In this document: positions 19,147-42,900 of the stretch, in pieces
Layout: every line of letters begins with the position of its first letter
How positions within the stretch are numbered: position 1 is the stretch's first letter
Assembly: GCA_964106915.2 (NCBI GenBank)
Contig: OZ066921.1
From: Podarcis gaigeae
Taxonomy: Eukaryota
Length of the DNA: 64,000 nt
Reading direction: 5' to 3' (one strand)
Made by a program: the position numbers and the translations under genes
Notes under the pieces: generated by a model
The model's input: only the letters and a program-made list of their open reading frames with translations
Told to the model about the DNA's origin: nothing
Databases searched by the model: none

Positions 19147-19432
19147 GTCCTGGGATGACTTCCACACCTGTGCCACCCAGGTTCTGTCCAGGTGCCCTGA
19201 GGAGGCAGCGAAAATCTGGGAGTCTCTTCGGCAGGAGTCCCGGAAGATCCAGTTCCAAGGCAACCTTCACGACCTCTGCAGCTCACGGGCCCAGCTGGCC
19301 GGCAGCGGGAGGGCTTCGGATATGGATGAGACCAACAAGGAGACCTTGCGGGGGGAAGCCTGGCTGCCTCGGCCCAGCTTTGTGGGCAGCCTGACTCTTG
19401 TGGCTCTCTTGGCTTTGGTGCCCTTTGCCTAG
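19147..19432 (+). CDS. NRN1L: Neuritin-like protein, exon 3 (C-terminal GPI-anchor signal)
   Basis: Acceptor cctcttcttgcag. SWDDFHTCATQVLSRCPEEAAKIWESLRQESRKIQFQGNLHDLC is a neuritin-family motif; hydrophobic C-terminus, then TAG. The three exons total 513 nt, i.e. 170 aa plus stop. Confidence 0.95.
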
Positions 19433-19782
19433 CCAGGGAGCAGTGGGAGGCCTCCCTCCCTCCTGTCCACCACAGTGCAGACCAGTGGCCCAGCACCGCT
19501 GCCTGCCAGGGAAATTGGGATCGGGCCTGGCAGTCGGCAGCGGTGCTCAGCGTGTCCTGATGACGGAGGCACAAGGCCCACTGGGTGGAAGAGGCAGGAT
19601 GCCATGGGCTTGCCTGCCTTGTGTCTTGCCCTGCTCAAAGAGGCTGGGTTGGGCTAATGGTGCTCTTCCTGTTCCCGTGTGCCCTACTTTTACCAGCCGG
19701 CACTTTGCAGCAGCTCTAGTGCCCTGTCCTCCTGCCTACACTGCCCCTTGTGTCCGTCTCCATTGCTCCCCAGCCTCATGCT

Positions 19783-19970
19783 AGGAACATAGGAAGCTGC
19801 CTTGTACTATTGGTCCATCTAGCTCATTATTGCCCACACTGGCTGGCAGCAGCTCTCCAGGGTTTCAGCTAGGGAGTCTCCCTCAGCCCTCACTGGAGAT
19901 GCTGAGGATGGAACCTGGGACCTTCTGCATGCAAAGCAGATGCTCGCCCTCTGAGCCATGGTCCTTCCCC
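19783..19970 (-). mobile_element. tRNA-derived SINE (antisense, in the NRN1L 3' UTR; duplicated at 29663-29850)
   Basis: Reverse complement of the SINE head (gaacctgggaccttctgcatgcaaagcagatgctc...ctgagccatgg) and tail (ggaacataggaagctgcc). Confidence 0.75.
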
Positions 19971-20987
19971 ATCCTGTACCACCCAGGAAACTCTGCCTAG
20001 GGGTAATATCTCAAAGCCACCGCCTCCCTGCTTCCTTATTCCAGTAAGAAAGGCATCAGTACACCCAGCTGCTTACAGCATCCTTGCCGAGTGACTAGTG
20101 TCCCCAAGAGTGCCAAAGGTAATGTGTCTGGATGTGACATGACATCAGCACTCTTGTCCTAGCCTTCCCCCATCCTGCAGCACTCTGTGTACCTGATCGA
20201 GTGGGAGCACAGCTGTCGCCGGTGAGCTTGGACACCTTAGGGATCTATACTGGCTGCAGGTGGGTGCTACAGTATACTTATTTGGGAATTATATAATTCT
20301 CTGCCCTAGAAGTTCAAGCCCTCCAGGTTACCCTTTGCATGGATAACAGCAGTCACTTAAGTTTCATCTGCTGTCTACTTCTCTGCAGGGTTTTTGACAT
20401 CTTATGCCTCCAAAGTACAGCATTTCCCCATGGGTAGGTCATTTCCCAGCCCAGTGCCCTTCGAGACATGCTTTCCACCCACCAGGATCAGCTGGCAGGG
20501 AAGCTGGTTTGGACCTGATGATAAACGGAGCACCCTCCACCAACTCTTTTGCCAGTGAGAGGGGGTCTGTGGCAGCCTTCCTCAACCTGGTGCTCTCCAG
20601 ATATTTAGGGGTGACGATGCCATCAGCCCTGATGGGAGTTGTGGTTCAAAACAGCCGGAGGGCACCAGGTTGGGGAAGGGGTAGTAGATGCTCTTGCCAT
20701 TCACAAGGTCATATCCTGAATATACATCTGCGCTATTCTTTTCCTTGTGGAGAGGGGCTTTTTGGAGGTAGGCGTGTTTTGTCCCATTTGGCTCGAGAGC
20801 ACTTTCCTAAAGGGGGTGTCCAGGGCTGCCTTGCCTGTGCAGCCCAGTCTCAGTTCAGAGATCCCCTCTGTTCCCAGCACACAGGTATCTGTTGGCCAAG
20901 ACGTGGAACGACAAATGTGTAAGCAATGGAAGTCCTGGGCCTCCCTTTTTGCTGGTGTCAGCTGTTCAAATGTATCTATATATTTAT

Positions 20988-20993
20988 ATTAAA
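20988..20993 (+). terminator. NRN1L: Probable NRN1L poly(A) signal ATTAAA (duplicated at 30868-30873)
   Basis: ATTAAA preceded by TGTA and an AT-rich element, followed by GU-rich sequence (ttgtcctgtgtggtggctttt). Confidence 0.55.
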
Positions 20994-22299
20994 AGGCACT
21001 TTTACATTTCTCTTGCCTTGTCCTGTGTGGTGGCTTTTGCCGTTCCTGCAGGGTGCTGCTGCCGGGAGCCTTTCTGCCTGTCGTGTCTTGTGATCCAGAT
21101 CGCACTTAACTTGGAAGAAGTCAGCGTTTGGGGGTAAATGAGCTCAGAGAACCGCAACATAAGGGGACCCCATGCCTCCTGGAGTGAGAGCTGTCTTCCC
21201 TGGCCTTTTTTAAAAAATACATTTTTGTTCCAAGGATATCAAACCTCCAAAAGTTTTTATTGTTCAGGCACACCATCCTCTTTATATATGCTAGTAGCAA
21301 TCTTGCTTCTGAGTGCCAGTCCTTTATAAAGTACGCGGCTTCTTCCCAAGAATCCTGGGAACCATAGTGTACCCCTCACAGTTTGCCTGCAATTCCCAGC
21401 GCCCTTTAACAAACTCCAGTGCCTAGAGTTGTTGGAGCAAGGTGTGTGCTTTAACTCTGTGGTGTGTCTGCAGCAATGTACGCTGGATATATGCATTCTG
21501 GTGTTGGATGGGGGGAGTGGGAGGGGAGGAGAGAGGGTGTGCTAACTGGCACATGTTTCCCCCCATTAAGGGTATTAACAGCTTTGCTTGGATTTCAGCT
21601 CTGTGTTCCCAGCGCTGCTTGCCCATAATGTAATTAATCTGCCTTTTTGCTTAAAGCCTCTCCTGAGCCCTCGACACCCACCTCTGTTTCTAGCCCAATT
21701 AAGCCCTTCCACAGCATGGCTGCAGTTCTGATACATCTCCTGGCACCCTCTACGCATTTGCCGCATGCCCAGGGCATGCAGGTACAATGGCTGCTTCCAA
21801 CCTTGGGTCAAACATCCGCCGCTATGGCACAGATCTTGCTCGTTATTCAGTTTTCAAATGTCTCTTTCTTTTGTTATTTTTCTTGAATGGGCCAAATCCT
21901 AGCTGGATTGGACAGTCAGCTTCTGCTCAGGCCAGATCCTCTAAACTACTTTAATCACTTGAGGCACTGATTCTGCACGGGAAATTGTTGCTGTTTTACC
22001 CCCCTGGGCCTTTCTCCTGTGATGATACCTAAAGATGGTTGGGCTATGTTGAGGAGGTGGGAAACAGAAGTTAAACGTTATGGTTAGAATGATGAAGGAA
22101 ACCTGAGTCCACGTCAGACGCTTCCACTACTTGGTTCCTGCATTTCAGATACAGGACTGTGCACTGAAATAAAGTTCAGTAGTCAATGACAGAAGAGGAG
22201 AAAGGTATGCATGGCAGTGAATAGAGGCAAGTTTTTCTCCCTCTCCCATAACGCTAGAACTTATGGACATCAAATGAAGCTGAAGATTAAGGCAGACCA

Positions 22300-22615
22300 A
22301 AGACAGTAACAGCACATAGTTAAACTGGAAATGGCTCCTGCAGGAAGCAGCGTTGGTCACCAATGTAATTGGTGTGGGTGACTTTAAAAAAGGATTAGGC
22401 ATGTTAATGTCAATGGCTATCGGCTACTAGCCATGATGACTGTGCTTTACCTCCACTGTCGGAGGCAAGGTGCCTGTGATTGTCACAAGTGAGGAAAGTG
22501 CTGTTGCGTTTTGTCCTGCTTTGAGGTTTCCCAGAAGCCTCAGATTGGTCAGTGCAAGAGCAGGATGCAGGACAAGATGGGCCTTTGGCCTGATCCAGCA
22601 GGGCTCCTATATTCT
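22300..22615 (+). mobile_element. Old CR1 3' fragment (duplicated at about 32180-32495)
   Basis: Ends in gatgggcctttggcctgatccagcagggctcc, the CR1-type 3' end also seen in reverse elsewhere in the window. Confidence 0.55.
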
Positions 22616-22767
22616 GCTAGATAAATGGGTTGCATAATGTCAAGGCTCCAAAGCTTCATCCTTGTGCTTTCTACAATGTTGGTTGAAGGATTTTAAGAGC
22701 TGCAGTGGTTGCTGAGTTGTAGCAGGAGTGTGCCAATGCAGTGCTGTGCCCCGACACTTGTCAAGGT

Positions 22768-22927
22768 GTTCCGTGTGCTGGAAGCTGTTTAGTCACGCTG
22801 GCCACATGACCTGGAAAAACTCTGCAGACACATACTGGCTCCTTTGGCCTGAAAGCAGAGATGAGCACCATTCCCCACAGTCCAATTCAACTGGACTTAA
22901 CTGTCCAGGGATCCTTTACCTTTACCT
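22768..22927 (+). mobile_element. Sauria SINE 3' part (duplicated at 32648-32807)
   Basis: agtcacgctggccacatgacc...gagatgagcacc...ggatcctttacctttacct, with the characteristic (ACCTTT)n tail. Confidence 0.75.
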
Positions 22928-25900
22928 GGTACTCAGGGATAGGTGGGGAGTGACCTGGGGGTGGTTGTTGGCCTGTACAAAGCAGCCCTAAATCTTTGGC
23001 TTTCTTTAGCCTGTGCTTCTTGCACCTGAACATGACAGAAATCTGGGCTTGCGAGCTGCGGTCTCTGGGGCAATGAGCTCAGCATTTTCTGAAAGGCACA
23101 AACAAGAGTCTGGTGCCTCCAGAGAGCCTCTGCCCCCAAAGGCCCCCTGCTTATTTCCATTCCACGCTCTGTGCTGGCACGCTTCAGGGAGAAACGGTCT
23201 CTTCCCTGTTAAGGCCTAATATAGCAGCAGGTGTGCACTGGGACAAGCAGGGGAGGAAAGATACTCTGTTCACCAGGCTATATCTCACTGAATGGAAAAA
23301 TGGGCTAAGGCAGGTAGTTTTCTTCTAATCTCCTATGTCCCTTCACCAGGTATCCCACTTGAAATTCCACACTCTACTTAAATCCTGCAGCAATTTCTCC
23401 AGGTCCTTTGATGCAAACTAGATGCTGGAAGCTGCTTTATACCTGAGCAGACTATTCATCCATCTAGTCTGTATTGTTTAGTCTGACTGACAGTAGCTGT
23501 CCAGGATCTCAGATAGCAGCTCTTCCCATCTCCTGCTAGGGATGTTTGAGTATTCCAATGGAAATGGGAAGGCAAATTGCCAGTTCCCCTTACCCCAAAT
23601 TCCCCTGATCTGTTCCATGTCCAGAACAGGACTCCAACAAATGGGAATGTAGAAGCATAAAACACACCCAGGTTCAGTGCAGCAATCTAGGTAAAAAATT
23701 ATCAGACAAAACCAGCAACAATTTAAAACCCAGCACAACATCTTTAAGCAGATCTAGATATCAGGTCTAACTTATTTAAATCTGACCTTTAAGTCTCATG
23801 GGCAGCTGGTTGGCCACTGAGAGAACAGAGTTCTGAACTAGATGGGACTGAGTCATGATACAGCAGCGCTCTCTTAAAATCAGAGAGAAAGAGGAGCCAT
23901 ACAGGATGAAGTACCACAAATGTGGGGCTACCACTCAAAAGACCTTATCACTTGTGCCTCATCTGACTTTGATTGTACAAGCAGGACCTCTGCAACCATC
24001 CTTAAGGCCCAGGCGTAGGTTGCTATGTTGCTATATGCCCAGGCAAATGGGGACATTGTCTTGGTATCACAATCATGCTAGACCACATTAGAGGGGGAAA
24101 GCAACTTTTGATTGCAGTGCTTGATTCTTTTTCTTCTTCCACATTCCACTGCCTTGCACCCATCTTTTCCCAAGCGGCATACAAGGCACTGAGATGTAAA
24201 GAAACCAAGTGCAGAGACCAGGAGATACATAGCAATAACAAGATGATCTGGTTATTTTAAGGGTCCTCCCTTTGCAGCCAGGATCAAATGTACATCCTAA
24301 GCTTTTACTTTTAGTTTTAAACTGTCTTTTTGGTCAGGGGAAGGAGCACACAAAGTCCTACTGATCCAAAATCCACAATTGGTGTGATGAAATCTGTTGA
24401 GAAGGGGGAAAGGTCAAAATCAAAATCAAGCAATTTGACCAACAATTTTTTTAACTGTGCGTAGCCAGGGGGTGGGACAGGGAAAGGGCTGCCCTCTGTA
24501 AATATGCACATTCAGCAGTTCCCTGCAAGGTCCCTCAGCATTTAAAAGCAGCCAGCAGGGCAGATAATCTGCCTATTCTTCATTTAGAATTTCAACAAGC
24601 CTGTGTTTAAGGGTGAATTAGTGCTGGATATCTGCAGGATTCAGCTAAGAGGATAAGCCAGGCTGATAGTATGTGTGAACAACAGAGGATACCCAGCTCA
24701 GCCTGAGTAGTTACTAGATGAATCACTTATCCAGGGCACACTCTATAGGTCACTTAACATGAATTAACCACCAGTTTATTCATAGTCAAACATAGTTTTG
24801 CTGGATTTTTTTAAAAAAAATCTTTCTATATGCCAGAGCCAGCCCTAACACTAGGCAGAATGGGGTGACTCCTTCAGGTAGCAGATGCTGGGGAGACAGC
24901 AGTAGCATCCCTCTGAGCCTCCCAGCCATTGCCCTCTGATGGAGGACAGAGCTGTGCATGCCATACAGTCTGTCCTGGCCCTCCTAAAATAGCCTCCTGC
25001 CCTCAGGTGCAATGGAAGATATTATCCTGTCCTCAGTATTGAAGAAAGGTTCAGCTTATGCCTTAATAAATGTGTTACTTTTTGATGCAACAGCCTAACA
25101 TGTCTCTGGAAGTTACAACTGTATACCGCTGCATTACAAAGCTGGCAGGTATGTTTATGATGCTGGGTGGAATTAAAGACTTGGTTATCAGAAATTATAC
25201 CTGTATCCAAAACTGACAGGTATGCATTTTGTGACAAAAACCTTTTCCCTCTGATCAGAAAACAGAAAATATTATCTATCTTGACAGAGCAGGTGTAGGT
25301 TTCTAATGCTACACAGGCCCTAGGAAACACTATGGTGACTTTCTGAATTTTGTTCTGATAAATTTCTGGACTATACTGGTAATGCTTTGAGCATGTAAAT
25401 AGAAAAGTGTTTTACATTTATTGTTGTTGTTGTTGTTATTAGACTGAGATCCAAAATCCCAGGATCTGAACTACTGCTACAGACCAATTAGCTGACCCTG
25501 TTTTTGCCTATAATAGACAAACCAAATTTTCTTTTGGATCTGTGACAACCCACACAAACTGTACTCTCTGCTGCTTGTTCTTCGACCTGTTTGGCTGCAC
25601 TCTCTGCATCCCCATCAGTCACTATTCACTATTCATAGGTGAACCAAGAGCCCTCTCACATTTATTTCATTTGGGTTTGATTTTATATTGACATAGTGAG
25701 AATGCACTGCGTAGGAGGTAAGAGGGACTGTGCTGGGAAGAGGTTGCGGCTGGGTGTGGACAATGCATCCTGCCCCTAGATGGTGCTTGATTGAACAATA
25801 CAAAGAAATACGTGTCTGGTGCACTGAATGCCAACTACACTTCTGAAGGAAGAAGTTGGGAATCCATAAAGGTAGCAAGATGGAACAAATACAAGGTTCT

Positions 25901-26815
25901 CTCCAACATTCAGATAACAAGCAAGCAAGCAAGCAGCTAAACACACTATCAGTGTTAGAAACCTGCTGTGAAAGGGCAGCTCAGGCACATGGAAGCGTGA
26001 CTCTGATAACAGTCCAGCCCTATGTGTATACTAATACTCTAAATTACATGCTTCTGTGTTCAGTGGGGCTTGCTCCCAGCTAAGTGTGCATAGGATCGCA
26101 GCCTTAATTGTAGATTTGGGAAGCACCTCAACTGTCATCTAGTCAGTAGTGACTGGTGCCCAATGAGACTGGAGAGGCAGAAGACAGGGCCCATCAGTCA
26201 GTGGCACCAGAGACAGTGACAGACAGAGCCAAGTACTTCCACCATCCTCTTCTCTGCTGAGGAATCTGACATCCAGTGTCACCCCTAGACAAGATGTAAC
26301 TAGGAAAGCAGGCAAGTGGGAGCAAACCGAAGTTGGTGGGGCAATGCCCCATTTATCCTAATGGACCATCCATCACTGCATCTAGTCCAATCTGTTGCCG
26401 GTGTAGGACATCCACTACTCTATTCCCAGTGTAGCAGTTATACAATTTTAGACTTTGAACTACTGTATATGATCTTACATGGGTTGATGGGAGGCTGTTG
26501 TTTAGATGGTAATGTGTATTTTATCACTTCAAAATGTAGTAAGCCGCCCCTGCAATGTTTGTGGTGAGGGGTCCTCCTGCTCATTCTGCTGAATGAGGCC
26601 CTGGGCTTCTTGCCCCAAAGTCCAGCCATGATGACAACACTGTACAACATCCCTGATAGGGTAGAAGGGCGTTTTGTAAAAGTCTCCTGAGATGTCAATA
26701 AAGTTCTTCTTCATGTTCAGTCAAAATATCCTTTCTTGTCATTTGAACCCCTTGGTTCAGGTTCAGCTTTCTGGAGCTACAGAAAACAACTCATTATTAC
26801 CTCACTAACATGCAG

Positions 26816-27830
26816 AAGAACTGAAGAAGAGCCTGCTGGATCAGGCCAACGGTCCATTTAATCCAACATCCTGTGGTCACAGGTGCCTAGGAGAAGCCCA
26901 CAAGCAGAACTCAAGCACAAGAGCACTCTCCCTCCTGTGGTTTCCCACAAATGGTGATCAGAAGCATAGAACCTTGGAAACAGAGTGTGACCATCATGGC
27001 CAGCAGCCGTTGATATCATTTGCCTCCGAATCCTCTTTTAAAGCCATCCAAGCTAGTGCCCATCACTGCGTCCTGTGGGCGTGAGTTCCACGGTGTAACT
27101 TTGCACTGTGGGAAGAAGCATTTTCTTTCGACTGCCCTGAGTACTTCAGCATTCAGCTTCACTGCATGTCCACAATTTCAAGGGCTGCGAGAGAGGAAGG
27201 AAAACTTTCCGCCGCCCACTTTCTCCACGCCACACATCATTTTATACACCTCTATTGTTTTGCCTCTTCCTTGCTTTTTCTCTAAATGGGTTCAGCCGCT
27301 GCAACCTTTCCTCACAGGGAAGTTACTCCATCCCCTTGATCATTCTTACTTGCCCTTTTCTAGCTCTGCAATATCTTTTCTCAGGTGAGGAGACCAGAAC
27401 AACACAGAATATTCCAAGTGCAGTTGCATCATAGTTTTGTATAACAGCATTAGGATATTGGCAGTTTTGTTTTCAATTCCTTTCCTTATGATCTCCAGCA
27501 AGAAAGTTGTCTCTTTTTTACAGTTGTTTCTCGGGTTAAGAACTTAATTCGTTCCGGAGGTCCATTCTTAACCTGAAACTGTTCTTAACCTGAAGCACCA
27601 CTTTAGCTAATGGGGCCTCCTGCTGCTGCCACACCGGCGGAGCATGATTTCTGTTCTCATCCTGAAGCAAAGTTCTTAACCCAAGGTAATATTTCTGGGT
27701 CAGCGGAGTCTGTAACCTGAAGCGTCTGTAACCTGAAGCATATGTAACCCGAGGTACCACTGTATATAGCTGGGTTAACGTTTTCATTGCGCTATCCACT
27801 ACAAGCTCATTTCTGGTCAGCCACCATCAA
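26816..27830 (-). mobile_element. CR1 LINE 3' fragment (antisense) with nested MITE (duplicated at 36696-37710)
   Basis: Same family as 3936-4640 (gaagagcctgctggatcaggccaa...; cagaatattccaagtg). Interrupted by a family-A MITE at 27521-27762. Confidence 0.7.
27521..27762. mobile_element. Family-A Tc1/mariner MITE
   Basis: Close copy of 15685-15926, TA-flanked; right TIR TAACCCGAGGTACCACTG. Confidence 0.88.
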
Positions 27831-28327
27831 TTCAGACTCCATTTTTTTTTGTCTGGATGAGCCTTCAGACACAGGATCCTCCTCTCTTCCATGAGCCATG
27901 GTACAGTCCAGGCACAGGCTGACCAGCGAGAGAGAACTAAGCTTAAGAGGCTAGGCTGCAAACCAGGAGAGTCCTTAGGTTCTGCCAGAATTAAGATTCT
28001 GGGTCAATATGAAAAGTTGTAAACTCTGGGTTTCATTTAACACTTTATGTACAATTTAAAAATTGCATTATATTATTGTCTTGTGAACCACCCTGTAACT
28101 GCATGAAGGGCAATCCATAAATTAAATTAATCAAATAAATAAATAAATGCCATTTATCTTGGTGGGCAGATGATCATTTTAAGGTTGACCCTAATTTTTA
28201 CAATGTTCCTATCTGCTGAGTCTATTTCTATTTATATGCTCTTGTTTTATTGTGTTCATGGGATTGCTTCATTTTTAATTGCTTTAAGCAATTTAGATGC
28301 ATTGGGAAGGGTATATGATTTTTAAAC

Positions 28328-28329
28328 AA

Positions 28330-28372
<43 letters not shown>

Positions 28373-28373
28373 A
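28328..28373. repeat. (AAAT)n microsatellite (same length in the duplicate at 38208-38253)
   Basis: Directly visible. Confidence 0.9.
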
Positions 28374-29656
28374 GTCAAAGACCTGGAAAGAGCAAGTTTC
28401 TGGCTTGGAGCTGTCCAAGGTCCTGTGATTTGAGCCCTACCTGGGCTGACTATTCCAGAGGTGGACAGAAGGTACATCAGCTTTTGCTTGTAGATCTCTG
28501 GGTGATTTGCAACTAGACTATAGCAAGGGTTTCTGAGTTTCAGTTGCTGTTAACAAAATTGTTCTCAACAAAATGACTTTTCCCACTTAAATTAGGTGGT
28601 TGAAATTAAAAGGTGTGTGAGTAACCAGGAATAGACTGCTGTGTAAAAGGACTGTGGTTTGTAGCCAACTTTTAGTTAGAGTAGACACATTAACATTCAT
28701 AAATGTAAGTTAGTTACATAATAAATGTAAGTTAGTGGGCACAATGACTACAATCTTGTGAGCTCAATTCAGTTATGATACTGGGGGAAAAACTTCTAGG
28801 CTCAGAATACTCTGGCTGACAGACCTCTGGTCTTCTCCTGTGGAAACATGTGCTCTGCCACTGAGCTACGGCCTTTCTGCTATCAGACACAAATTCAAGC
28901 TGCAAGTTCTCCATCCTTAACTAAAAGCATGAAAACCACCCATTTGCTCTTGATCTTAAAGTAGACCTGCCAAATCTGAAGTCTGCCCACCTCTGGACTA
29001 TTGCCAGTCTTAGCCACCTCTCATGCCCTGTCCCACCTGTAGCCAGGACATAATAGTTCACACGGACTAGCAGAATTAGCACAGGAGGAAACTTCAGGGC
29101 GAGGGTGTTGTGGGGCTCAAGCAGGGTTTTGTGCTCAAGCCTGTTTGCTTTGGCCTGTGCCACTCACAGTAATCCTCATATTGCCCAGTCAACTATGTGG
29201 ACTAGCACAGGTTTGAACAGTCCACTTGTGGCTTGTGGGAAATACTATTCTCCCACACTCTCCTTTCCTCTGACACTTAGGCTGTGTGCATGGTATATTT
29301 TTAAAGCACACTTTGAACACATTATTTCCCTCAAAGAATTCTGGGCACTGTGGCATGTTAAGGATTGCTGGGAACTGTAATTCTGTGAGGGGTAAGCTTG
29401 AGCGCCCATAATTCTTTGAGGGAAAGAATGCATTTCAAACGTGCTTTAAAGGTATAGTGAGGACATCCTCCATCTGAAATTACCCTTCTAGAGACACCAT
29501 CAGGGGGTGGAAGAGAATGTGGTGGAGGCAACTGGACTAAGAGGGCAGCAAAAGCAATATAGACAGAGGCTGAAGCTTAGGAAATTCCCAGCCTGGATTT
29601 AGCTTCCATTCTCAGCCATCATTTGTTACCTGTGTGCGCACACAAATGAATTCACC

Positions 29657-32600
29657 CATGCTAGGAACATAGGAAGCTGCCTTGTACTATTGGTCCATCT
29701 AGCTCATTATTGCCCACACTGGCTGGCAGCAGCTCTCCAGGGTTTCAGCTAGGGAGTCTCCCTCAGCCCTCACTGGAGATGCTGAGGATGGAACCTGGGA
29801 CCTTCTGCATGCAAAGCAGATGCTCGCCCTCTGAGCCATGGTCCTTCCCCATCCTGTACCACCCAGGAAACTCTGCCTAGGGGTAATATCTCAAAGCCAC
29901 CGCCTCCCTGCTTCCTTATTCCAGTAAGAAAGGCATCAGTACACCCAGCTGCTTACAGCATCCTTGCCGAGTGACTAGTGTCCCCAAGAGTGCCAAAGGT
30001 AATGTGTCTGGATGTGACATGACATCAGCACTCTTGTCCTAGCCTTCCCCCATCCTGCAGCACTCTGTGTACCTGATCGAGTGGGAGCACAGCTGTCGCC
30101 GGTGAGCTTGGACACCTTAGGGATCTATACTGGCTGCAGGTGGGTGCTACAGTATACTTATTTGGGAATTATATAATTCTCTGCCCTAGAAGTTCAAGCC
30201 CTCCAGGTTACCCTTTGCATGGATAACAGCAGTCACTTAAGTTTCATCTGCTGTCTACTTCTCTGCAGGGTTTTTGACATCTTATGCCTCCAAAGTACAG
30301 CATTTCCCCATGGGTAGGTCATTTCCCAGCCCAGTGCCCTTCGAGACATGCTTTCCACCCACCAGGATCAGCTGGCAGGGAAGCTGGTTTGGACCTGATG
30401 ATAAACGGAGCACCCTCCACCAACTCTTTTGCCAGTGAGAGGGGGTCTGTGGCAGCCTTCCTCAACCTGGTGCTCTCCAGATATTTAGGGGTGACGATGC
30501 CATCAGCCCTGATGGGAGTTGTGGTTCAAAACAGCCGGAGGGCACCAGGTTGGGGAAGGGGTAGTAGATGCTCTTGCCATTCACAAGGTCATATCCTGAA
30601 TATACATCTGCGCTATTCTTTTCCTTGTGGAGAGGGGCTTTTTGGAGGTAGGCGTGTTTTGTCCCATTTGGCTCGAGAGCACTTTCCTAAAGGGGGTGTC
30701 CAGGGCTGCCTTGCCTGTGCAGCCCAGTCTCAGTTCAGAGATCCCCTCTGTTCCCAGCACACAGGTATCTGTTGGCCAAGACGTGGAACGACAAATGTGT
30801 AAGCAATGGAAGTCCTGGGCCTCCCTTTTTGCTGGTGTCAGCTGTTCAAATGTATCTATATATTTATATTAAAAGGCACTTTTACATTTCTCTTGCCTTG
30901 TCCTGTGTGGTGGCTTTTGCCGTTCCTGCAGGGTGCTGCTGCCGGGAGCCTTTCTGCCTGTCGTGTCTTGTGATCCAGATCGCACTTAACTTGGAAGAAG
31001 TCAGCGTTTGGGGGTAAATGAGCTCAGAGAACCGCAACATAAGGGGACCCCATGCCTCCTGGAGTGAGAGCTGTCTTCCCTGGCCTTTTTTAAAAAATAC
31101 ATTTTTGTTCCAAGGATATCAAACCTCCAAAAGTTTTTATTGTTCAGGCACACCATCCTCTTTATATATGCTAGTAGCAATCTTGCTTCTGAGTGCCAGT
31201 CCTTTATAAAGTACGCGGCTTCTTCCCAAGAATCCTGGGAACCATAGTGTACCCCTCACAGTTTGCCTGCAATTCCCAGCGCCCTTTAACAAACTCCAGT
31301 GCCTAGAGTTGTTGGAGCAAGGTGTGTGCTTTAACTCTGTGGTGTGTCTGCAGCAATGTACGCTGGATATATGCATTCTGGTGTTGGATGGGGGGAGTGG
31401 GAGGGGAGGAGAGAGGGTGTGCTAACTGGCACATGTTTCCCCCCATTAAGGGTATTAACAGCTTTGCTTGGATTTCAGCTCTGTGTTCCCAGCGCTGCTT
31501 GCCCATAATGTAATTAATCTGCCTTTTTGCTTAAAGCCTCTCCTGAGCCCTCGACACCCACCTCTGTTTCTAGCCCAATTAAGCCCTTCCACAGCATGGC
31601 TGCAGTTCTGATACATCTCCTGGCACCCTCTACGCATTTGCCGCATGCCCAGGGCATGCAGGTACAATGGCTGCTTCCAACCTTGGGTCAAACATCCGCC
31701 GCTATGGCACAGATCTTGCTCGTTATTCAGTTTTCAAATGTCTCTTTCTTTTGTTATTTTTCTTGAATGGGCCAAATCCTAGCTGGATTGGACAGTCAGC
31801 TTCTGCTCAGGCCAGATCCTCTAAACTACTTTAATCACTTGAGGCACTGATTCTGCACGGGAAATTGTTGCTGTTTTACCCCCCTGGGCCTTTCTCCTGT
31901 GATGATACCTAAAGATGGTTGGGCTATGTTGAGGAGGTGGGAAACAGAAGTTAAACGTTATGGTTAGAATGATGAAGGAAACCTGAGTCCACGTCAGACG
32001 CTTCCACTACTTGGTTCCTGCATTTCAGATACAGGACTGTGCACTGAAATAAAGTTCAGTAGTCAATGACAGAAGAGGAGAAAGGTATGCATGGCAGTGA
32101 ATAGAGGCAAGTTTTTCTCCCTCTCCCATAACGCTAGAACTTATGGACATCAAATGAAGCTGAAGATTAAGGCAGACCAAAGACAGTAACAGCACATAGT
32201 TAAACTGGAAATGGCTCCTGCAGGAAGCAGCGTTGGTCACCAATGTAATTGGTGTGGGTGACTTTAAAAAAGGATTAGGCATGTTAATGTCAATGGCTAT
32301 CGGCTACTAGCCATGATGACTGTGCTTTACCTCCACTGTCGGAGGCAAGGTGCCTGTGATTGTCACAAGTGAGGAAAGTGCTGTTGCGTTTTGTCCTGCT
32401 TTGAGGTTTCCCAGAAGCCTCAGATTGGTCAGTGCAAGAGCAGGATGCAGGACAAGATGGGCCTTTGGCCTGATCCAGCAGGGCTCCTATATTCTGCTAG
32501 ATAAATGGGTTGCATAATGTCAAGGCTCCAAAGCTTCATCCTTGTGCTTTCTACAATGTTGGTTGAAGGATTTTAAGAGCTGCAGTGGTTGCTGAGTTGT

Positions 32601-35600
32601 AGCAGGAGTGTGCCAATGCAGTGCTGTGCCCCGACACTTGTCAAGGTGTTCCGTGTGCTGGAAGCTGTTTAGTCACGCTGGCCACATGACCTGGAAAAAC
32701 TCTGCAGACACATACTGGCTCCTTTGGCCTGAAAGCAGAGATGAGCACCATTCCCCACAGTCCAATTCAACTGGACTTAACTGTCCAGGGATCCTTTACC
32801 TTTACCTGGTACTCAGGGATAGGTGGGGAGTGACCTGGGGGTGGTTGTTGGCCTGTACAAAGCAGCCCTAAATCTTTGGCTTTCTTTAGCCTGTGCTTCT
32901 TGCACCTGAACATGACAGAAATCTGGGCTTGCGAGCTGCGGTCTCTGGGGCAATGAGCTCAGCATTTTCTGAAAGGCACAAACAAGAGTCTGGTGCCTCC
33001 AGAGAGCCTCTGCCCCCAAAGGCCCCCTGCTTATTTCCATTCCACGCTCTGTGCTGGCACGCTTCAGGGAGAAACGGTCTCTTCCCTGTTAAGGCCTAAT
33101 ATAGCAGCAGGTGTGCACTGGGACAAGCAGGGGAGGAAAGATACTCTGTTCACCAGGCTATATCTCACTGAATGGAAAAATGGGCTAAGGCAGGTAGTTT
33201 TCTTCTAATCTCCTATGTCCCTTCACCAGGTATCCCACTTGAAATTCCACACTCTACTTAAATCCTGCAGCAATTTCTCCAGGTCCTTTGATGCAAACTA
33301 GATGCTGGAAGCTGCTTTATACCTGAGCAGACTATTCATCCATCTAGTCTGTATTGTTTAGTCTGACTGACAGTAGCTGTCCAGGATCTCAGATAGCAGC
33401 TCTTCCCATCTCCTGCTAGGGATGTTTGAGTATTCCAATGGAAATGGGAAGGCAAATTGCCAGTTCCCCTTACCCCAAATTCCCCTGATCTGTTCCATGT
33501 CCAGAACAGGACTCCAACAAATGGGAATGTAGAAGCATAAAACACACCCAGGTTCAGTGCAGCAATCTAGGTAAAAAATTATCAGACAAAACCAGCAACA
33601 ATTTAAAACCCAGCACAACATCTTTAAGCAGATCTAGATATCAGGTCTAACTTATTTAAATCTGACCTTTAAGTCTCATGGGCAGCTGGTTGGCCACTGA
33701 GAGAACAGAGTTCTGAACTAGATGGGACTGAGTCATGATACAGCAGCGCTCTCTTAAAATCAGAGAGAAAGAGGAGCCATACAGGATGAAGTACCACAAA
33801 TGTGGGGCTACCACTCAAAAGACCTTATCACTTGTGCCTCATCTGACTTTGATTGTACAAGCAGGACCTCTGCAACCATCCTTAAGGCCCAGGCGTAGGT
33901 TGCTATGTTGCTATATGCCCAGGCAAATGGGGACATTGTCTTGGTATCACAATCATGCTAGACCACATTAGAGGGGGAAAGCAACTTTTGATTGCAGTGC
34001 TTGATTCTTTTTCTTCTTCCACATTCCACTGCCTTGCACCCATCTTTTCCCAAGCGGCATACAAGGCACTGAGATGTAAAGAAACCAAGTGCAGAGACCA
34101 GGAGATACATAGCAATAACAAGATGATCTGGTTATTTTAAGGGTCCTCCCTTTGCAGCCAGGATCAAATGTACATCCTAAGCTTTTACTTTTAGTTTTAA
34201 ACTGTCTTTTTGGTCAGGGGAAGGAGCACACAAAGTCCTACTGATCCAAAATCCACAATTGGTGTGATGAAATCTGTTGAGAAGGGGGAAAGGTCAAAAT
34301 CAAAATCAAGCAATTTGACCAACAATTTTTTTAACTGTGCGTAGCCAGGGGGTGGGACAGGGAAAGGGCTGCCCTCTGTAAATATGCACATTCAGCAGTT
34401 CCCTGCAAGGTCCCTCAGCATTTAAAAGCAGCCAGCAGGGCAGATAATCTGCCTATTCTTCATTTAGAATTTCAACAAGCCTGTGTTTAAGGGTGAATTA
34501 GTGCTGGATATCTGCAGGATTCAGCTAAGAGGATAAGCCAGGCTGATAGTATGTGTGAACAACAGAGGATACCCAGCTCAGCCTGAGTAGTTACTAGATG
34601 AATCACTTATCCAGGGCACACTCTATAGGTCACTTAACATGAATTAACCACCAGTTTATTCATAGTCAAACATAGTTTTGCTGGATTTTTTTAAAAAAAA
34701 TCTTTCTATATGCCAGAGCCAGCCCTAACACTAGGCAGAATGGGGTGACTCCTTCAGGTAGCAGATGCTGGGGAGACAGCAGTAGCATCCCTCTGAGCCT
34801 CCCAGCCATTGCCCTCTGATGGAGGACAGAGCTGTGCATGCCATACAGTCTGTCCTGGCCCTCCTAAAATAGCCTCCTGCCCTCAGGTGCAATGGAAGAT
34901 ATTATCCTGTCCTCAGTATTGAAGAAAGGTTCAGCTTATGCCTTAATAAATGTGTTACTTTTTGATGCAACAGCCTAACATGTCTCTGGAAGTTACAACT
35001 GTATACCGCTGCATTACAAAGCTGGCAGGTATGTTTATGATGCTGGGTGGAATTAAAGACTTGGTTATCAGAAATTATACCTGTATCCAAAACTGACAGG
35101 TATGCATTTTGTGACAAAAACCTTTTCCCTCTGATCAGAAAACAGAAAATATTATCTATCTTGACAGAGCAGGTGTAGGTTTCTAATGCTACACAGGCCC
35201 TAGGAAACACTATGGTGACTTTCTGAATTTTGTTCTGATAAATTTCTGGACTATACTGGTAATGCTTTGAGCATGTAAATAGAAAAGTGTTTTACATTTA
35301 TTGTTGTTGTTGTTGTTATTAGACTGAGATCCAAAATCCCAGGATCTGAACTACTGCTACAGACCAATTAGCTGACCCTGTTTTTGCCTATAATAGACAA
35401 ACCAAATTTTCTTTTGGATCTGTGACAACCCACACAAACTGTACTCTCTGCTGCTTGTTCTTCGACCTGTTTGGCTGCACTCTCTGCATCCCCATCAGTC
35501 ACTATTCACTATTCATAGGTGAACCAAGAGCCCTCTCACATTTATTTCATTTGGGTTTGATTTTATATTGACATAGTGAGAATGCACTGCGTAGGAGGTA

Positions 35601-38209
35601 AGAGGGACTGTGCTGGGAAGAGGTTGCGGCTGGGTGTGGACAATGCATCCTGCCCCTAGATGGTGCTTGATTGAACAATACAAAGAAATACGTGTCTGGT
35701 GCACTGAATGCCAACTACACTTCTGAAGGAAGAAGTTGGGAATCCATAAAGGTAGCAAGATGGAACAAATACAAGGTTCTCTCCAACATTCAGATAACAA
35801 GCAAGCAAGCAAGCAGCTAAACACACTATCAGTGTTAGAAACCTGCTGTGAAAGGGCAGCTCAGGCACATGGAAGCGTGACTCTGATAACAGTCCAGCCC
35901 TATGTGTATACTAATACTCTAAATTACATGCTTCTGTGTTCAGTGGGGCTTGCTCCCAGCTAAGTGTGCATAGGATCGCAGCCTTAATTGTAGATTTGGG
36001 AAGCACCTCAACTGTCATCTAGTCAGTAGTGACTGGTGCCCAATGAGACTGGAGAGGCAGAAGACAGGGCCCATCAGTCAGTGGCACCAGAGACAGTGAC
36101 AGACAGAGCCAAGTACTTCCACCATCCTCTTCTCTGCTGAGGAATCTGACATCCAGTGTCACCCCTAGACAAGATGTAACTAGGAAAGCAGGCAAGTGGG
36201 AGCAAACCGAAGTTGGTGGGGCAATGCCCCATTTATCCTAATGGACCATCCATCACTGCATCTAGTCCAATCTGTTGCCGGTGTAGGACATCCACTACTC
36301 TATTCCCAGTGTAGCAGTTATACAATTTTAGACTTTGAACTACTGTATATGATCTTACATGGGTTGATGGGAGGCTGTTGTTTAGATGGTAATGTGTATT
36401 TTATCACTTCAAAATGTAGTAAGCCGCCCCTGCAATGTTTGTGGTGAGGGGTCCTCCTGCTCATTCTGCTGAATGAGGCCCTGGGCTTCTTGCCCCAAAG
36501 TCCAGCCATGATGACAACACTGTACAACATCCCTGATAGGGTAGAAGGGCGTTTTGTAAAAGTCTCCTGAGATGTCAATAAAGTTCTTCTTCATGTTCAG
36601 TCAAAATATCCTTTCTTGTCATTTGAACCCCTTGGTTCAGGTTCAGCTTTCTGGAGCTACAGAAAACAACTCATTATTACCTCACTAACATGCAGAAGAA
36701 CTGAAGAAGAGCCTGCTGGATCAGGCCAACGGTCCATTTAATCCAACATCCTGTGGTCACAGGTGCCTAGGAGAAGCCCACAAGCAGAACTCAAGCACAA
36801 GAGCACTCTCCCTCCTGTGGTTTCCCACAAATGGTGATCAGAAGCATAGAACCTTGGAAACAGAGTGTGACCATCATGGCCAGCAGCCGTTGATATCATT
36901 TGCCTCCGAATCCTCTTTTAAAGCCATCCAAGCTAGTGCCCATCACTGCGTCCTGTGGGCGTGAGTTCCACGGTGTAACTTTGCACTGTGGGAAGAAGCA
37001 TTTTCTTTCGACTGCCCTGAGTACTTCAGCATTCAGCTTCACTGCATGTCCACAATTTCAAGGGCTGCGAGAGAGGAAGGAAAACTTTCCGCCGCCCACT
37101 TTCTCCACGCCACACATCATTTTATACACCTCTATTGTTTTGCCTCTTCCTTGCTTTTTCTCTAAATGGGTTCAGCCGCTGCAACCTTTCCTCACAGGGA
37201 AGTTACTCCATCCCCTTGATCATTCTTACTTGCCCTTTTCTAGCTCTGCAATATCTTTTCTCAGGTGAGGAGACCAGAACAACACAGAATATTCCAAGTG
37301 CAGTTGCATCATAGTTTTGTATAACAGCATTAGGATATTGGCAGTTTTGTTTTCAATTCCTTTCCTTATGATCTCCAGCAAGAAAGTTGTCTCTTTTTTA
37401 CAGTTGTTTCTCGGGTTAAGAACTTAATTCGTTCCGGAGGTCCATTCTTAACCTGAAACTGTTCTTAACCTGAAGCACCACTTTAGCTAATGGGGCCTCC
37501 TGCTGCTGCCACACCGGCGGAGCATGATTTCTGTTCTCATCCTGAAGCAAAGTTCTTAACCCAAGGTAATATTTCTGGGTCAGCGGAGTCTGTAACCTGA
37601 AGCGTCTGTAACCTGAAGCATATGTAACCCGAGGTACCACTGTATATAGCTGGGTTAACGTTTTCATTGCGCTATCCACTACAAGCTCATTTCTGGTCAG
37701 CCACCATCAATTCAGACTCCATTTTTTTTTGTCTGGATGAGCCTTCAGACACAGGATCCTCCTCTCTTCCATGAGCCATGGTACAGTCCAGGCACAGGCT
37801 GACCAGCGAGAGAGAACTAAGCTTAAGAGGCTAGGCTGCAAACCAGGAGAGTCCTTAGGTTCTGCCAGAATTAAGATTCTGGGTCAATATGAAAAGTTGT
37901 AAACTCTGGGTTTCATTTAACACTTTATGTACAATTTAAAAATTGCATTATATTATTGTCTTGTGAACCACCCTGTAACTGCATGAAGGGCAATCCATAA
38001 ATTAAATTAATCAAATAAATAAATAAATGCCATTTATCTTGGTGGGCAGATGATCATTTTAAGGTTGACCCTAATTTTTACAATGTTCCTATCTGCTGAG
38101 TCTATTTCTATTTATATGCTCTTGTTTTATTGTGTTCATGGGATTGCTTCATTTTTAATTGCTTTAAGCAATTTAGATGCATTGGGAAGGGTATATGATT
38201 TTTAAACAA

Positions 38210-38252
<43 letters not shown>

Positions 38253-39536
38253 AGTCAAAGACCTGGAAAGAGCAAGTTTCTGGCTTGGAGCTGTCCAAGG
38301 TCCTGTGATTTGAGCCCTACCTGGGCTGACTATTCCAGAGGTGGACAGAAGGTACATCAGCTTTTGCTTGTAGATCTCTGGGTGATTTGCAACTAGACTA
38401 TAGCAAGGGTTTCTGAGTTTCAGTTGCTGTTAACAAAATTGTTCTCAACAAAATGACTTTTCCCACTTAAATTAGGTGGTTGAAATTAAAAGGTGTGTGA
38501 GTAACCAGGAATAGACTGCTGTGTAAAAGGACTGTGGTTTGTAGCCAACTTTTAGTTAGAGTAGACACATTAACATTCATAAATGTAAGTTAGTTACATA
38601 ATAAATGTAAGTTAGTGGGCACAATGACTACAATCTTGTGAGCTCAATTCAGTTATGATACTGGGGGAAAAACTTCTAGGCTCAGAATACTCTGGCTGAC
38701 AGACCTCTGGTCTTCTCCTGTGGAAACATGTGCTCTGCCACTGAGCTACGGCCTTTCTGCTATCAGACACAAATTCAAGCTGCAAGTTCTCCATCCTTAA
38801 CTAAAAGCATGAAAACCACCCATTTGCTCTTGATCTTAAAGTAGACCTGCCAAATCTGAAGTCTGCCCACCTCTGGACTATTGCCAGTCTTAGCCACCTC
38901 TCATGCCCTGTCCCACCTGTAGCCAGGACATAATAGTTCACACGGACTAGCAGAATTAGCACAGGAGGAAACTTCAGGGCGAGGGTGTTGTGGGGCTCAA
39001 GCAGGGTTTTGTGCTCAAGCCTGTTTGCTTTGGCCTGTGCCACTCACAGTAATCCTCATATTGCCCAGTCAACTATGTGGACTAGCACAGGTTTGAACAG
39101 TCCACTTGTGGCTTGTGGGAAATACTATTCTCCCACACTCTCCTTTCCTCTGACACTTAGGCTGTGTGCATGGTATATTTTTAAAGCACACTTTGAACAC
39201 ATTATTTCCCTCAAAGAATTCTGGGCACTGTGGCATGTTAAGGATTGCTGGGAACTGTAATTCTGTGAGGGGTAAGCTTGAGCGCCCATAATTCTTTGAG
39301 GGAAAGAATGCATTTCAAACGTGCTTTAAAGGTATAGTGAGGACATCCTCCATCTGAAATTACCCTTCTAGAGACACCATCAGGGGGTGGAAGAGAATGT
39401 GGTGGAGGCAACTGGACTAAGAGGGCAGCAAAAGCAATATAGACAGAGGCTGAAGCTTAGGAAATTCCCAGCCTGGATTTAGCTTCCATTCTCAGCCATC
39501 ATTTGTTACCTGTGTGCGCACACAAATGAATTCACC
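29657..39536 (+). repeat. Tandem segmental duplication, copy 2 (9,880 bp)
   Basis: Identical ORF track to copy 1. Identity ends at ...gaattcaccca (39538, counting the 2-bp CA microhomology), then unique sequence resumes. Confidence 0.97.
37401..37642. mobile_element. Family-A Tc1/mariner MITE (duplicated copy)
   Basis: Same as 27521-27762 at +9880. Confidence 0.88.
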
Positions 39537-39851
39537 CAATAGAGACTCTTGACTGCATTCTCTTGTCTCCCAGTTGCAGGTGAGACTCAGCCTGCAATTT
39601 GTACAGCTATTTGAAAGCTAGTTTGAACTGGTGGGTGATTGATTCCTTCGTCAAGGGAAATGGACACAGCGCACCCCTCTTGTCCATTACAAAACTCTCC
39701 AGCGACCTACTTTACCCTCCCTGCCTTTGTTCTTAATTCCTAGAAATGGCTGCGCTCCAGATTTTGCCCATCAAGGCAAATTAATTGGAGTCAATCCTAA
39801 TTTGCTCTCTGCTGTTCTTTGGCCAGAAGATTAAATGCTTTGCAGACATTA

Positions 39852-39862
39852 TCCTCCTCCTC

Positions 39863-39909
<47 letters not shown>
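39852..39909. repeat. (TCC)n/(TC)n microsatellite
   Basis: Directly visible. Confidence 0.9.
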
Positions 39910-39911
<2 letters not shown>

Positions 39912-42900
39912 TAAGGGACAAACCTCCCTGAATTGGGAGGGACAGGCGGGTGGGGGAAAAGGATAAAAGAAGGGAGAGTTAAAAGGAGATGATGTTTAAA
40001 TTCACTCTTTGTAATTGTGAAGCGGGGGTGGGGAGAAGATGCTGCGCTGCAGCCATTGTTGAGAAGCCGGGCACCAGATGGTGACACTATTCTGGGCAGC
40101 TGTGTGACAGCAGTGGGCACACGTGGAGTAGAGCTGTGGGGGCCAAGACCATTCCTATGACAGTGCCCTCTTAAGATCATGCTGGAATACTGATGATCCT
40201 TACAGGGCCTGCACCGAGAGGATAGCTTGACGGAAAGTCAGAGTTGGCTTGGAGCAGTATGGTTCTCTATGTGAAACATTAAATCCTCTCTCACTTTAGC
40301 ATACTGGGGCCACATCCATACCATACATTTAAAGCACTATTATACCACTTTAAACAGTCATGACTTCCCCCAAGGAATCATGGGAACTGTAGTTTGTTAA
40401 GGGTGCTGAGAGCTGTTAGGAGACTTCCATTCTCACAGGGCTACAATTCCTAGTGTGGTTTAACAACCAACTCAATTAACTCTGTGAAACTGTAGTACAT
40501 ACATCACACTCCCCCGCCCTTTTAAACAACAACAACACAGAGGTCTTGCACAAAGAGTCCAAGATCTGAGCAGGTGTTGTTACAAGGTGAAATCACTGCT
40601 TGGCCAACACCATCTTAAGCAATATTTGAATCTTTACAAATCCCTTGAGCCAAGGAGAGCCCTACTCTGTTTTGTCCTGCTAATGGTTACCAGGTAATTC
40701 ATTCTCCAAGGGCTAGGACTTCCTGCAATTAGTTTCCTGCAATGTCCCTGGATGTGTTACCTCAATGAGAAAAAAAAGAACCTTCTTTCTCAGGACAATG
40801 GGGAGAAAAAGGAATGGGATCTTATGGTTCCACCGCCATAGGTCCCAACATCATCATAGTTTCTGGCATTTCAGTTTGGTAAATAACAAGCTTTTTTCAA
40901 AACTTCCCTCTATCATGTCATATGATTTAAGCAAGCCGTAATCCAGGAAAACCTCCAGGAAGCGGTAGTTTTCCATGTGATTCATATATCTCTTTATAGC
41001 AGGGGTAGTTCCTATTTTTGAATACTAGTCCCTGGTAAAATAGGATTCCTATTTTGTTTTTAGGAGAGAAACTGGGTGAATGTACATTTGTGTACGTTCA
41101 TGTGCATGTGAATCCTGGGAACTATAGTTTGTTAAGGCTGCTGGCAATAGTTCTATGAGGGGCAAACTCAGTTCCCAGTATTCTGGGTGCTTTAAATGTA
41201 TCATGTGCATGGAGGTTTTATATAAAACATACCGGCAAGCAGTAGGTTGCAGATTGGTGAGGGGCCACAGCTGATCTAGAGTCATCTTTCCTCACAAACA
41301 CAGAAGTATTGTTTGCAGGTCTGATCCTAACTCAATGTAGGCACACCACACAAGCTTTTGATTTCAGCGTGCTTCGGTGCACCTAACTCTGCAAGGGATC
41401 AAGTTGCTATTTCCTCAAGCTGTTACCAAATAAGCTCAGTTCGAGAAGACCCTTGCCCCCATTCAGTGTGAAGCTGGATTTAAATAGAATTAACTGAACA
41501 TGAATCCATTCCTTTTGGCCTCCATCCAGATTTGCAGATACTGATAGGGGCCTTTTTTGCACTCTGAGAAGGGCACCTTCTTTGCCACATGTTCTTCTTG
41601 CCCCAGGCATCTGGCAAAATCAGATGACTCATGTAGCCTGCTTTTGTTACTGGCAGAGAACTAAGTTCTGGTGAGGGAAAGCAGCTCCACTTGTATATGT
41701 CAGTAATTAAAACACAGAATACTAGCAGCTTCATATGTGGTGTAACTCAGGAATTCTAAAAAACATCCTCACTGGGCAACAGTCATTCGTTCCCCTTACC
41801 TTGGGTTTCCTTGGAATAATAGTTTGTGACTAAGTAGTAGACTTTGAGCACTTCCAGAGTTTTGGTATTTTGCGGTGGGATTCATTCACATATTGGTAAA
41901 TTCAGGTCACATAACTAAAACTGATTTGGAGCTCTTGCATAATGAATTCACTCCCCTAATTTGACTTTTTGTGACAAGGAAATTGATGGGGAAATGCCCT
42001 GGGAAATTTGGGGTAACATTTGCTTGACATAGCATCATTTAACCTCCCTGCAAACTTTGTGCGAATAAATCAGGATAAATCAATAAGCAGTTTGTCTTGA
42101 AGTGACCAGAGTCCCCATCCCAACAATAGATCTGAACAGGGGGAGGGAACTGATTTTCCAAATGAGAGTTTTCAAAAACTGAAAAATACCCAAGCACTAT
42201 TTGTTTGACATAAAGTTTTTATAACTAACCATTTTATAAATGGAGACAACAAAATATCTCTGCAGCACACAGAAACATTATCACACAATATTTAGGTGAC
42301 CTAGTATCAATGGGATAATGAACTGGATTGTATTCGTTTTCAAAAGAATGGTGTTTGCAGGCAACATTATTTTTCTACTAATGTCACACAACAGATGATT
42401 TTTTCCACAAGAAAACAAGTGGTTTTGTTAAGAGAAGTATCCAAAGAATCGGGGAGTAAAGATGAGAGAAGCTTGCTTTTGAGTCAAGTAGAGGCTTAAT
42501 CCAGGAGTGGGGCCAACTCTTGCCTCCACATCACACAACATGATGTCAGTGTCTGTTTACAATTTCCAAAGGACAAACAGGATGGTATTTCTGCAAAAGA
42601 ATTAATGAATACTAATTGGGTCTTAGAAATGACAATTCATAGAAACCAGAGCGAACATTCCTGTCTCTGAGGTGGTCTTTTTCTAAATTTAAAGACTTTA
42701 TACTAAACACACACAAAAACCCTGAATGTTTTCAAGGCTAGTAGAGCTGCTGACCTGGAGTTTGTTGATTGATTTGACACAATTTCTTTTGACCTGTATT
42801 GTGATTTTTAGGTTGGTTCAGTTGGCACAAACAGTTAGTAGCTCTCACATATGACAACAGACAAATTGAGCACAAACTTCCTAGGTAGTCCGGACCCATC

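What the first reader, a model, noticed from the sequence alone, without database searches (positions are those of the whole stretch)
19777..39538. Apparently exact 9,880-bp head-to-tail tandem duplication between NRN1L and PSKH1
Seen: all ORFs in 20404-29433 recur with identical translation at a constant +9880 offset, so there are no net indels, and the slippage-prone (AAAT)n and (TTG)n tracts have the same length in both copies. The novel junction reads ...gaattcacc-CA-tgctaggaac; CA is shared by the left flank (cagcct-CA-tgc) and the right flank (ttcacc-CA-atag). I see no long homologous repeat shared by the two breakpoints, so NAHR is not supported. I did not compare every base. Inference: zero visible divergence over about 10 kb points to either a very recent, possibly polymorphic, microhomology-mediated duplication or a mis-assembly/artificial duplication. 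The latter is at least as likely.
Basis: partly seen in the sequence, partly recalled or inferred. Interest (0 to 1): 0.85.

Follow-up and report, generated by a model that had tools for sequence, protein, structure and literature searches.

The report
Real 9.9-kb duplication in wall lizard
A 9,880-base stretch of non-coding DNA between two genes is present twice in a row in one wall lizard; sequencing data show it is a real, young copy-number variant rather than an assembly error, which is an ordinary kind of variation with no shown effect.

Summary
Observation confirmed: 19777-29658 equals 29657-39538 with 0 mismatches in 9,882 bp, no gaps, junction microhomology CA. The window is a Podarcis-like lacertid. 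Two public runs of the probable source animal each hold a 58-base contig made of exactly the 28 junction-only 31-mers, and their neighbouring contigs branch at both breakpoints. In a conspecific and a close relative the contigs run through both breakpoints; Zootoca is single-copy. Contig depth (suggestive only) is about 1.5-fold over the unit, with junction/unit 0.36-0.45, which fits a heterozygous duplication. No breakpoint homology, so NAHR is out; 2 bp is compatible with chance (P about 0.15), so template switching and end joining cannot be told apart. Zero substitutions put the age under about 77,000 years. The unit has no coding exon: it holds the distal NRN1L 3'UTR with its poly(A) signal and four conserved non-coding elements, one shared with turtle and duck. 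Both genes keep intact flanks. This is an ordinary non-recurrent tandem duplication; an enhancer-dosage effect is possible but untested. The scan's notes held no earlier report of it.

The parts
19777..29656 (.). Copy 1 of the 9,880-bp unit, joined natively to the left flank (NRN1L 3'UTR)
   Evidence: left breakpoint is contiguous in five lacertid assemblies
29657..39536 (.). Copy 2 of the unit, joined natively to the right flank; identity extends to 39538 through the shared CA
   Evidence: right breakpoint contiguous in Zootoca L001
29657..29658 (.). Novel head-to-tail junction, 2-bp microhomology CA, no inserted bases
29629..29686 (.). Span of the 28 junction-only 31-mers; matches exactly the 58-base contig in runs X15 and X16
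   Evidence: table 8 records 12 and 19
19147..19432 (+). NRN1L last coding exon (outside the duplication, single copy)
19782..19971 (-). High-copy SINE-like repeat whose tail lies 5 bp inside the left breakpoint (copy at 29662-29851); present in all five lacertids, so older than the duplication. Family (Squam3-like tRNA-derived SINE) named from memory, not tested
   Evidence: (repeat-level depth)
20940..21035 (+). Conserved block with ATTAAA at 20988, the probable NRN1L poly(A) signal (inferred; copy at 30868)
   Evidence: 84-94% identity in non-lacertid squamates, 90% over 49 bp in turtle, 86% over 43 bp in duck
21524..21706 (.). Conserved non-coding element 1 (copy at +9880)
   Evidence: 85-88% in five non-lacertid squamates, 83% over 115 bp in turtle
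23026..23284 (.). Conserved non-coding element 2 (copy at +9880)
   Evidence: 77-88% in five non-lacertid squamates
24457..24720 (.). Conserved non-coding element 3, shared with turtle and duck; candidate enhancer (copy at +9880)
   Evidence: 82-85% over about 105-113 bp in turtle and duck, stops in all six frames
25661..25810 (.). Conserved non-coding element 4, weaker (copy at +9880)
   Evidence: 71-73% in Anolis and gecko
27519..27764 (.). 246-bp MITE-like element carried in both copies (second at 37399-37644); inserted before the duplication
39511..39524 (.). 14-bp perfect palindrome of alternating purine-pyrimidine, 12 bp before the distal breakpoint (also 29631-29644); possible fork-stalling feature, weak support
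39663..40127 (.). Conserved non-coding element just outside the right breakpoint (not duplicated)
   Evidence: 91% over 169 bp in duck, 76% over 465 bp in gecko
51252..52223 (+). ORF holding the first PSKH1 coding exon (outside the duplication); CpG island at about 45001-46000 is its probable promoter

Best explanation
A real, constitutional, simple tandem duplication in the sequenced lizard, most likely on one of its two chromosomes (three copies of the unit per diploid genome). It arose once in a germ line within roughly the last 77,000 years by a non-homologous event: a DNA end at the distal breakpoint (39537-39538) was joined to, or resumed synthesis at, a site 9,880 bp upstream (19777-19778), with the shared CA at the join. 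I favour a replication-based backward template switch or polymerase-theta-type join at a stalled or broken fork (about 65%) over breakage of both sisters with end joining (about 35%). Shown: sequence identity, junction structure, junction words in reads of two runs, single-copy state in relatives. Inferred: zygosity, germ-line origin, repair pathway, age. Functionally it is probably near neutral: no coding exon is copied, NRN1L keeps its native 3' end in copy 1, and PSKH1 keeps about 6 kb of native upstream DNA.
For: Identity and junction. Runs X15 and X16 (one sample, share 0.97, no letter differences over 28420-32420) each contain a 0-mismatch 58-base contig at 29629-29686, word depth 23 and 58.8; adjoining contigs end at 29658 (290 of 290 bases laid) and begin at 29657 (78 of 78). 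A single-copy allele lacks exactly 28 31-mers spanning 29629-29686. Conspecific X1 and relative X2: contigs pass both breakpoints; their overhangs of 347-348 bases would end at 39885-39886, inside the (CT)n tract of the native right flank. Zootoca assembly single copy. Unit depth over other-locus contigs 1.56 and 1.46 in X15/X16 versus 0.96 and 1.18 in X1/X2; repeat-normalised medians 1.35-1.45; junction/unit 0.36 and 0.45. No breakpoint homology. Non-recurrent CNV junctions typically show blunt ends or microhomology, and tandem duplication is readily explained by an upstream template switch (PMC3447954; PMC8096281).
Against: The 58-base contig has only 28-30 letters on each side, below the tool's 31-letter rule for a bridging record; no single record runs from flank across the whole unit and junction. 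The tool warns that contig depth is not a copy number. Library types of X15 and X16 are not on record, and both are one sample, so they are not independent animals. X16's junction/unit ratio (0.45) lies nearer 0.5 (homozygous) than 0.33. The 2-bp overlap is compatible with chance (P about 0.15), so the pathway is not determined.
Confidence: 0.8

Rival explanations
1. Real duplication, but homozygous in this animal (common or fixed in its population).
For: X16 junction/unit ratio 0.45; repeat-normalised range reaches 1.8 at its extreme; no heterozygous sites seen in 4 kb.
Against: X15 ratio 0.36; unit depth about 1.4-1.5-fold, not 2-fold, in both runs; contigs drop minor alleles, so missing variants say little; the conspecific X1 shows run-through contigs.
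Confidence: 0.09
2. Assembly artefact: false duplication from uncollapsed haplotypes, a contig-join overlap or a chimeric long read.
For: Perfect identity; false duplications are widespread in vertebrate assemblies (PMC9516828).
Against: That paper's hallmarks are half or very low depth, a gap between the copies and haplotype-specific k-mers. Here there is no gap and no difference between copies (about 30 would be expected at the rate seen between the window and conspecific X1), depth is raised, and junction words occur in two runs at depth 23 and 59. An assembler cannot put words into read-derived contigs.
Confidence: 0.03
3. The junction is real DNA but not an inherited tandem allele: a somatic clone, an abundant extrachromosomal circle of the unit, or an amplification chimera shared by both libraries.
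For: A 9,880-bp circle gives the same junction words; both runs come from one sample.
Against: Junction depth is about 0.56-0.65 of other-locus depth in both runs, about one per diploid genome, far above what circles or chimeras usually reach (general knowledge); the assembly places it in tandem with both native flanks.
Confidence: 0.06
4. Non-allelic homologous recombination between repeats (for example two SINE copies).
For: The left breakpoint lies 5 bp from a SINE-like tail.
Against: No related repeat at the right breakpoint; best match between the 1-kb regions is 11 bp and not in register; only 2 bp shared at the join.
Confidence: 0.01

Closest known systems
Non-recurrent simple tandem-duplication CNVs of vertebrate germ lines (FoSTeS/MMBIR or alternative end joining; PMC3447954)
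   Same: Head-to-tail, unique breakpoints, 0-few bp microhomology, no flanking homology, no inserted bases, polymorphic.
   Different: Nothing essential; only the species and locus are new.
About 10-kb microhomology-flanked tandem duplications of BRCA1-deficient cells (signature RS3; stalled-fork and polymerase-theta models; PMC8096281)
   Same: Size (9.9 kb), head-to-tail orientation, short microhomology.
   Different: Those are many somatic events in a repair-deficient genome. This is one event in a wild-type-looking animal; no repair defect or genome-wide excess was tested, and the scan's notes list no similar exact kb-scale duplication in this genome.
False duplications in assemblies, heterotype and homotype (PMC9516828)
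   Same: Adjacent, near-identical copies on one scaffold.
   Different: No gap, no haplotype-specific differences, raised rather than halved depth, and junction words present in read-derived contigs.
Duplications of conserved non-coding elements that change gene dosage in cis (e.g. SHH ZRS, BMP2, SOX9 enhancer duplications; from memory)
   Same: Duplicates several deeply conserved non-coding elements without any coding exon.
   Different: No enhancer activity, target gene, expression change or phenotype is shown here.

Membership tests
Non-recurrent simple tandem-duplication CNV | Two copies head-to-tail with both native flanks kept | tested here: met
Non-recurrent simple tandem-duplication CNV | Novel junction present in the animal's DNA, not only in the assembly | tested here: met
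   58-base junction-only contig in two runs with branches at both breakpoints; caveat: under the tool's 31-letter bridging rule, contigs not raw reads
Non-recurrent simple tandem-duplication CNV | Blunt or microhomologous join without long homology | tested here: met
   2 bp CA, no insertion, best 1-kb-region match 11 bp
Non-recurrent simple tandem-duplication CNV | Raised copy number over the unit | tested here: inconclusive
   about 1.4-1.5-fold by contig word depth, but the tool states this is no copy number
Non-recurrent simple tandem-duplication CNV | Polymorphic or derived: single copy in other individuals and relatives | tested here: met
   X1, X2 run-through contigs (one animal each, contigs show presence not absence); Zootoca assembly
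Non-recurrent simple tandem-duplication CNV | Germ-line transmission | not testable with these tools
   no relatives or second tissue identified
False duplication (assembly error) | [quoted passage not shown] | tested here: not met
   no N; junction words at depth 23 and 58.8
False duplication (assembly error) | Haplotype-specific differences between copies (heterotype) | tested here: not met
   0 differences in 9,882 bp
False duplication (assembly error) | Reads support only one diploid dose of the unit | tested here: not met
   unit depth about 1.5-fold in source-like runs versus about 1.0-1.2 in controls; suggestive only
NAHR duplication | Long homologous repeats in register at both breakpoints | tested here: not met
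BRCA1-type tandem-duplicator phenotype (RS3) | Many about 10-kb duplications genome-wide with an HR defect | not testable with these tools
   only one window; no similar note elsewhere in this genome's 85 annotated windows
Enhancer-duplication allele | Unit holds conserved non-coding elements | tested here: met
Enhancer-duplication allele | Changed expression of a target gene or a phenotype | not testable with these tools

The most novel reading that the evidence does not exclude
The duplication is a segregating regulatory allele: it doubles a cassette of squamate- to sauropsid-conserved enhancers and the NRN1L poly(A) site, moves NRN1L 9.9 kb further from PSKH1 and from the conserved element at 39663-40127, and measurably changes NRN1L, PSKH1 or EDC4 expression in carriers.
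Probability: 0.1. Interest if true: 0.45.

Novelty: new member of a known kind. Interest (0 to 1): 0.2.

Why it matters
As it stands, little: it is one of the many young structural variants any diploid vertebrate carries. It has two practical uses. It shows that a perfectly identical 10-kb tandem pair in a modern assembly can be true biology, so such pairs should be checked by junction words before being purged. And the reference sequence here carries a probably minor allele, which will halve mapping quality and distort depth and variant calls over 19.8 kb for other individuals. It would matter more if the duplicated conserved elements prove to be enhancers with a dosage effect on NRN1L or PSKH1.

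Tried and rejected
Hidden gene in the unit: five ORFs of 91-172 aa match no Pfam family; no Rfam match in 19000-30500; conserved blocks 1-3 have stops in all six frames and gapped alignments. NAHR: rejected. Templated insertion or inverted segment at the join: none. Hairpin at the breakpoints: folding no better than shuffles (z -0.97, 0.38, -0.89); a 14-bp palindrome near the distal breakpoint has a post hoc chance of about 0.02-0.04, kept only as a weak lead. No G4 motif at either breakpoint. Direct test in Podarcis assemblies failed: the fetched loci stop 160-440 bp short of the junction position. Species name not obtained, as run names are coded; the unit differs by about 4% from three Podarcis assemblies, 5.2% from Zootoca and 5.7% from Lacerta. 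No paper mentions NRN1L, PSKH1 and duplication together; Willis et al. 2017 was not held. Scan notes: nothing near this place, no similar exact duplication.
Full report
Observation. A base-by-base comparison at offset 9,880 gives one unbroken identical run: window 19777-29658 equals 29657-39538, 9,882 bp with no mismatch or indel, and the window has no N. The unit is 9,880 bp; the dinucleotide CA is shared by the left breakpoint, the junction and the right breakpoint, and no bases are inserted. Microsatellites in the unit have equal lengths in both copies.

Organism and context. The ORF at 19010-19432 is the last coding exon of neuritin-like NRN1L, with best named hits in squamates; the kinase ORF from 51252 is PSKH1; EDC4 ends at the window start, as in the orthologous loci. 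Orthologous DNA from three Podarcis assemblies differs from the unit by about 4% substitutions, Zootoca by 5.2% and Lacerta by 5.7%, so the window is a Podarcis-like wall lizard; the species name stays coded.

Ancestral state. The Zootoca assembly runs from the left flank through one unit into the right flank, and gecko and duck show the conserved blocks once, in order. The left breakpoint is contiguous in all five lacertid loci. The Podarcis loci stop just short of the junction position and could not be used for that side.

Real or artefact. The run search found two runs of one sample (X15, X16; share 0.97), one conspecific (X1; 0.83) and close relatives. Laid on 28420-32420, X15 and X16 show no letter difference from the window, so they are probably the source animal; X1 shows 12. 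Both X15 and X16 contain a 58-base contig at 29629-29686 with no mismatch, at word depth 23 and 58.8. Their neighbouring contigs end exactly at 29658 and begin exactly at 29657, wholly laid (table 8). Removing one unit in memory shows that the only 31-mers lost are 28 words spanning 29629-29686, 58 bases. The contig is therefore precisely the junction-only path of a de Bruijn graph, which a single-copy genome cannot yield. In X1 and X2 no such contig is listed, and contigs pass both breakpoints with unlike overhangs whose lengths would end at 39885-39886, inside the (CT)n tract of the native right flank, and at 18568-18606 on the left. Caveats: the record has 28-30 letters on each side, under the tool's 31-letter rule for a bridge; contigs show presence, not absence; both supporting runs are one sample with library types not on record; no record spans flank, unit and junction together.

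Zygosity. The tool warns that contig depth is no copy number, so this is suggestive. Unit depth over contigs from other loci is 1.56 (X15) and 1.46 (X16) against 0.96 (X1) and 1.18 (X2); normalised by repeat-bin depth the medians are 1.35-1.45 (range 1.14-1.83); junction over unit is 0.36 and 0.45. Three copies with one junction predict 1.5 and 0.33; four copies with two junctions predict 2.0 and 0.5; an artefact predicts 1.0 and 0. Heterozygous fits best. The hallmarks of false duplications (half or very low depth, gaps, haplotype-specific words; PMC9516828) are absent.

Mechanism. There is no homology between the parental breakpoints (best 11 bp, out of register), so NAHR is excluded although a SINE-like tail lies 5 bp inside the left breakpoint; that repeat is shared by all five lacertids and predates the event. 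A shared stretch of 2 bp or more arises by chance in about 15% of random joins at this composition, so the CA does not prove a microhomology-driven pathway. [quoted passage not shown] I favour the replication-based route at about two to one (inference). A 14-bp alternating purine-pyrimidine palindrome lies 12 bp before the distal breakpoint; the post hoc chance is about 0.02-0.04 and local folding is unremarkable, so it is a weak lead.

Age. At 1.98e-9 substitutions per site per year (Podarcis muralis; PMC8760935), zero differences in 9,880 bp give a 95% upper bound of about 77,000 years, absent gene conversion. About 30 differences would be expected at the rate seen between the window and conspecific X1, so both copies descend from one haplotype.

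Content and likely effect. The unit has no Pfam or Rfam match. It begins 345 bp after the NRN1L stop and holds a conserved block with ATTAAA at 20988, the probable poly(A) signal, and four conserved non-coding elements: 21524-21706 (to turtle), 23026-23284 (squamates, a trace in turtle), 24457-24720 (to turtle and duck) and 25661-25810 (Anolis, gecko). A fifth, 91% identical to duck over 169 bp, starts 125 bp beyond the right breakpoint and is not copied. Copy 1 leaves the NRN1L 3' end native; copy 2 leaves about 6 kb upstream of the PSKH1 CpG island native. The stop-to-start distance grows from 21,940 to 31,820 bp. Any effect would come from enhancer dosage or spacing; none is shown.

Verdict. 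A real, young, probably heterozygous non-recurrent tandem duplication: a new member of a well-known kind. No paper or earlier scan note describes it. Interest 0.2; the regulatory-allele reading has probability about 0.1 and would merit about 0.45.

Noticed in passing
window 13056-13227: Fold-back inverted duplication of about 75 bp (arms 13056-13130 and 13153-13227, 96% complementary) in NRN1L intron 1; the first arm is absent from all five lacertid relatives, so it is lineage-specific.
   Followed up: partly
window 18212-18660: About 450-bp insertion with an A-rich tail and a target-site duplication of about 16 bp in the last NRN1L intron, absent from the five relatives: a young non-LTR retroelement fragment.
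   Followed up: partly
window 15683-15928, 27519-27764, 60949-61144; L003-L006: 246-bp MITE-like family with discordant presence: the 27519 copy is shared with L003 and L004 but absent from L005 and L006, whereas the 15683 copy is shared with L005 only. Suggests incomplete lineage sorting or introgression among Podarcis.
   Followed up: partly
window 39663-40127: Non-coding element 91% identical to duck over 169 bp, interrupted by a (CT)22 tract; the strongest conserved element between NRN1L and PSKH1, just outside the duplication.
   Followed up: partly
window 48123-48413 and 57076-57367: Two inverted copies (80-91%) of an interspersed repeat on either side of the first PSKH1 coding exon.
   Followed up: no
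window 28420-29658 versus 29797-32420 in run X1: The conspecific shows 0 differences over the first 1.2 kb but 12 over the next 2.6 kb laid; haplotype sharing varies along the unit.
   Followed up: no
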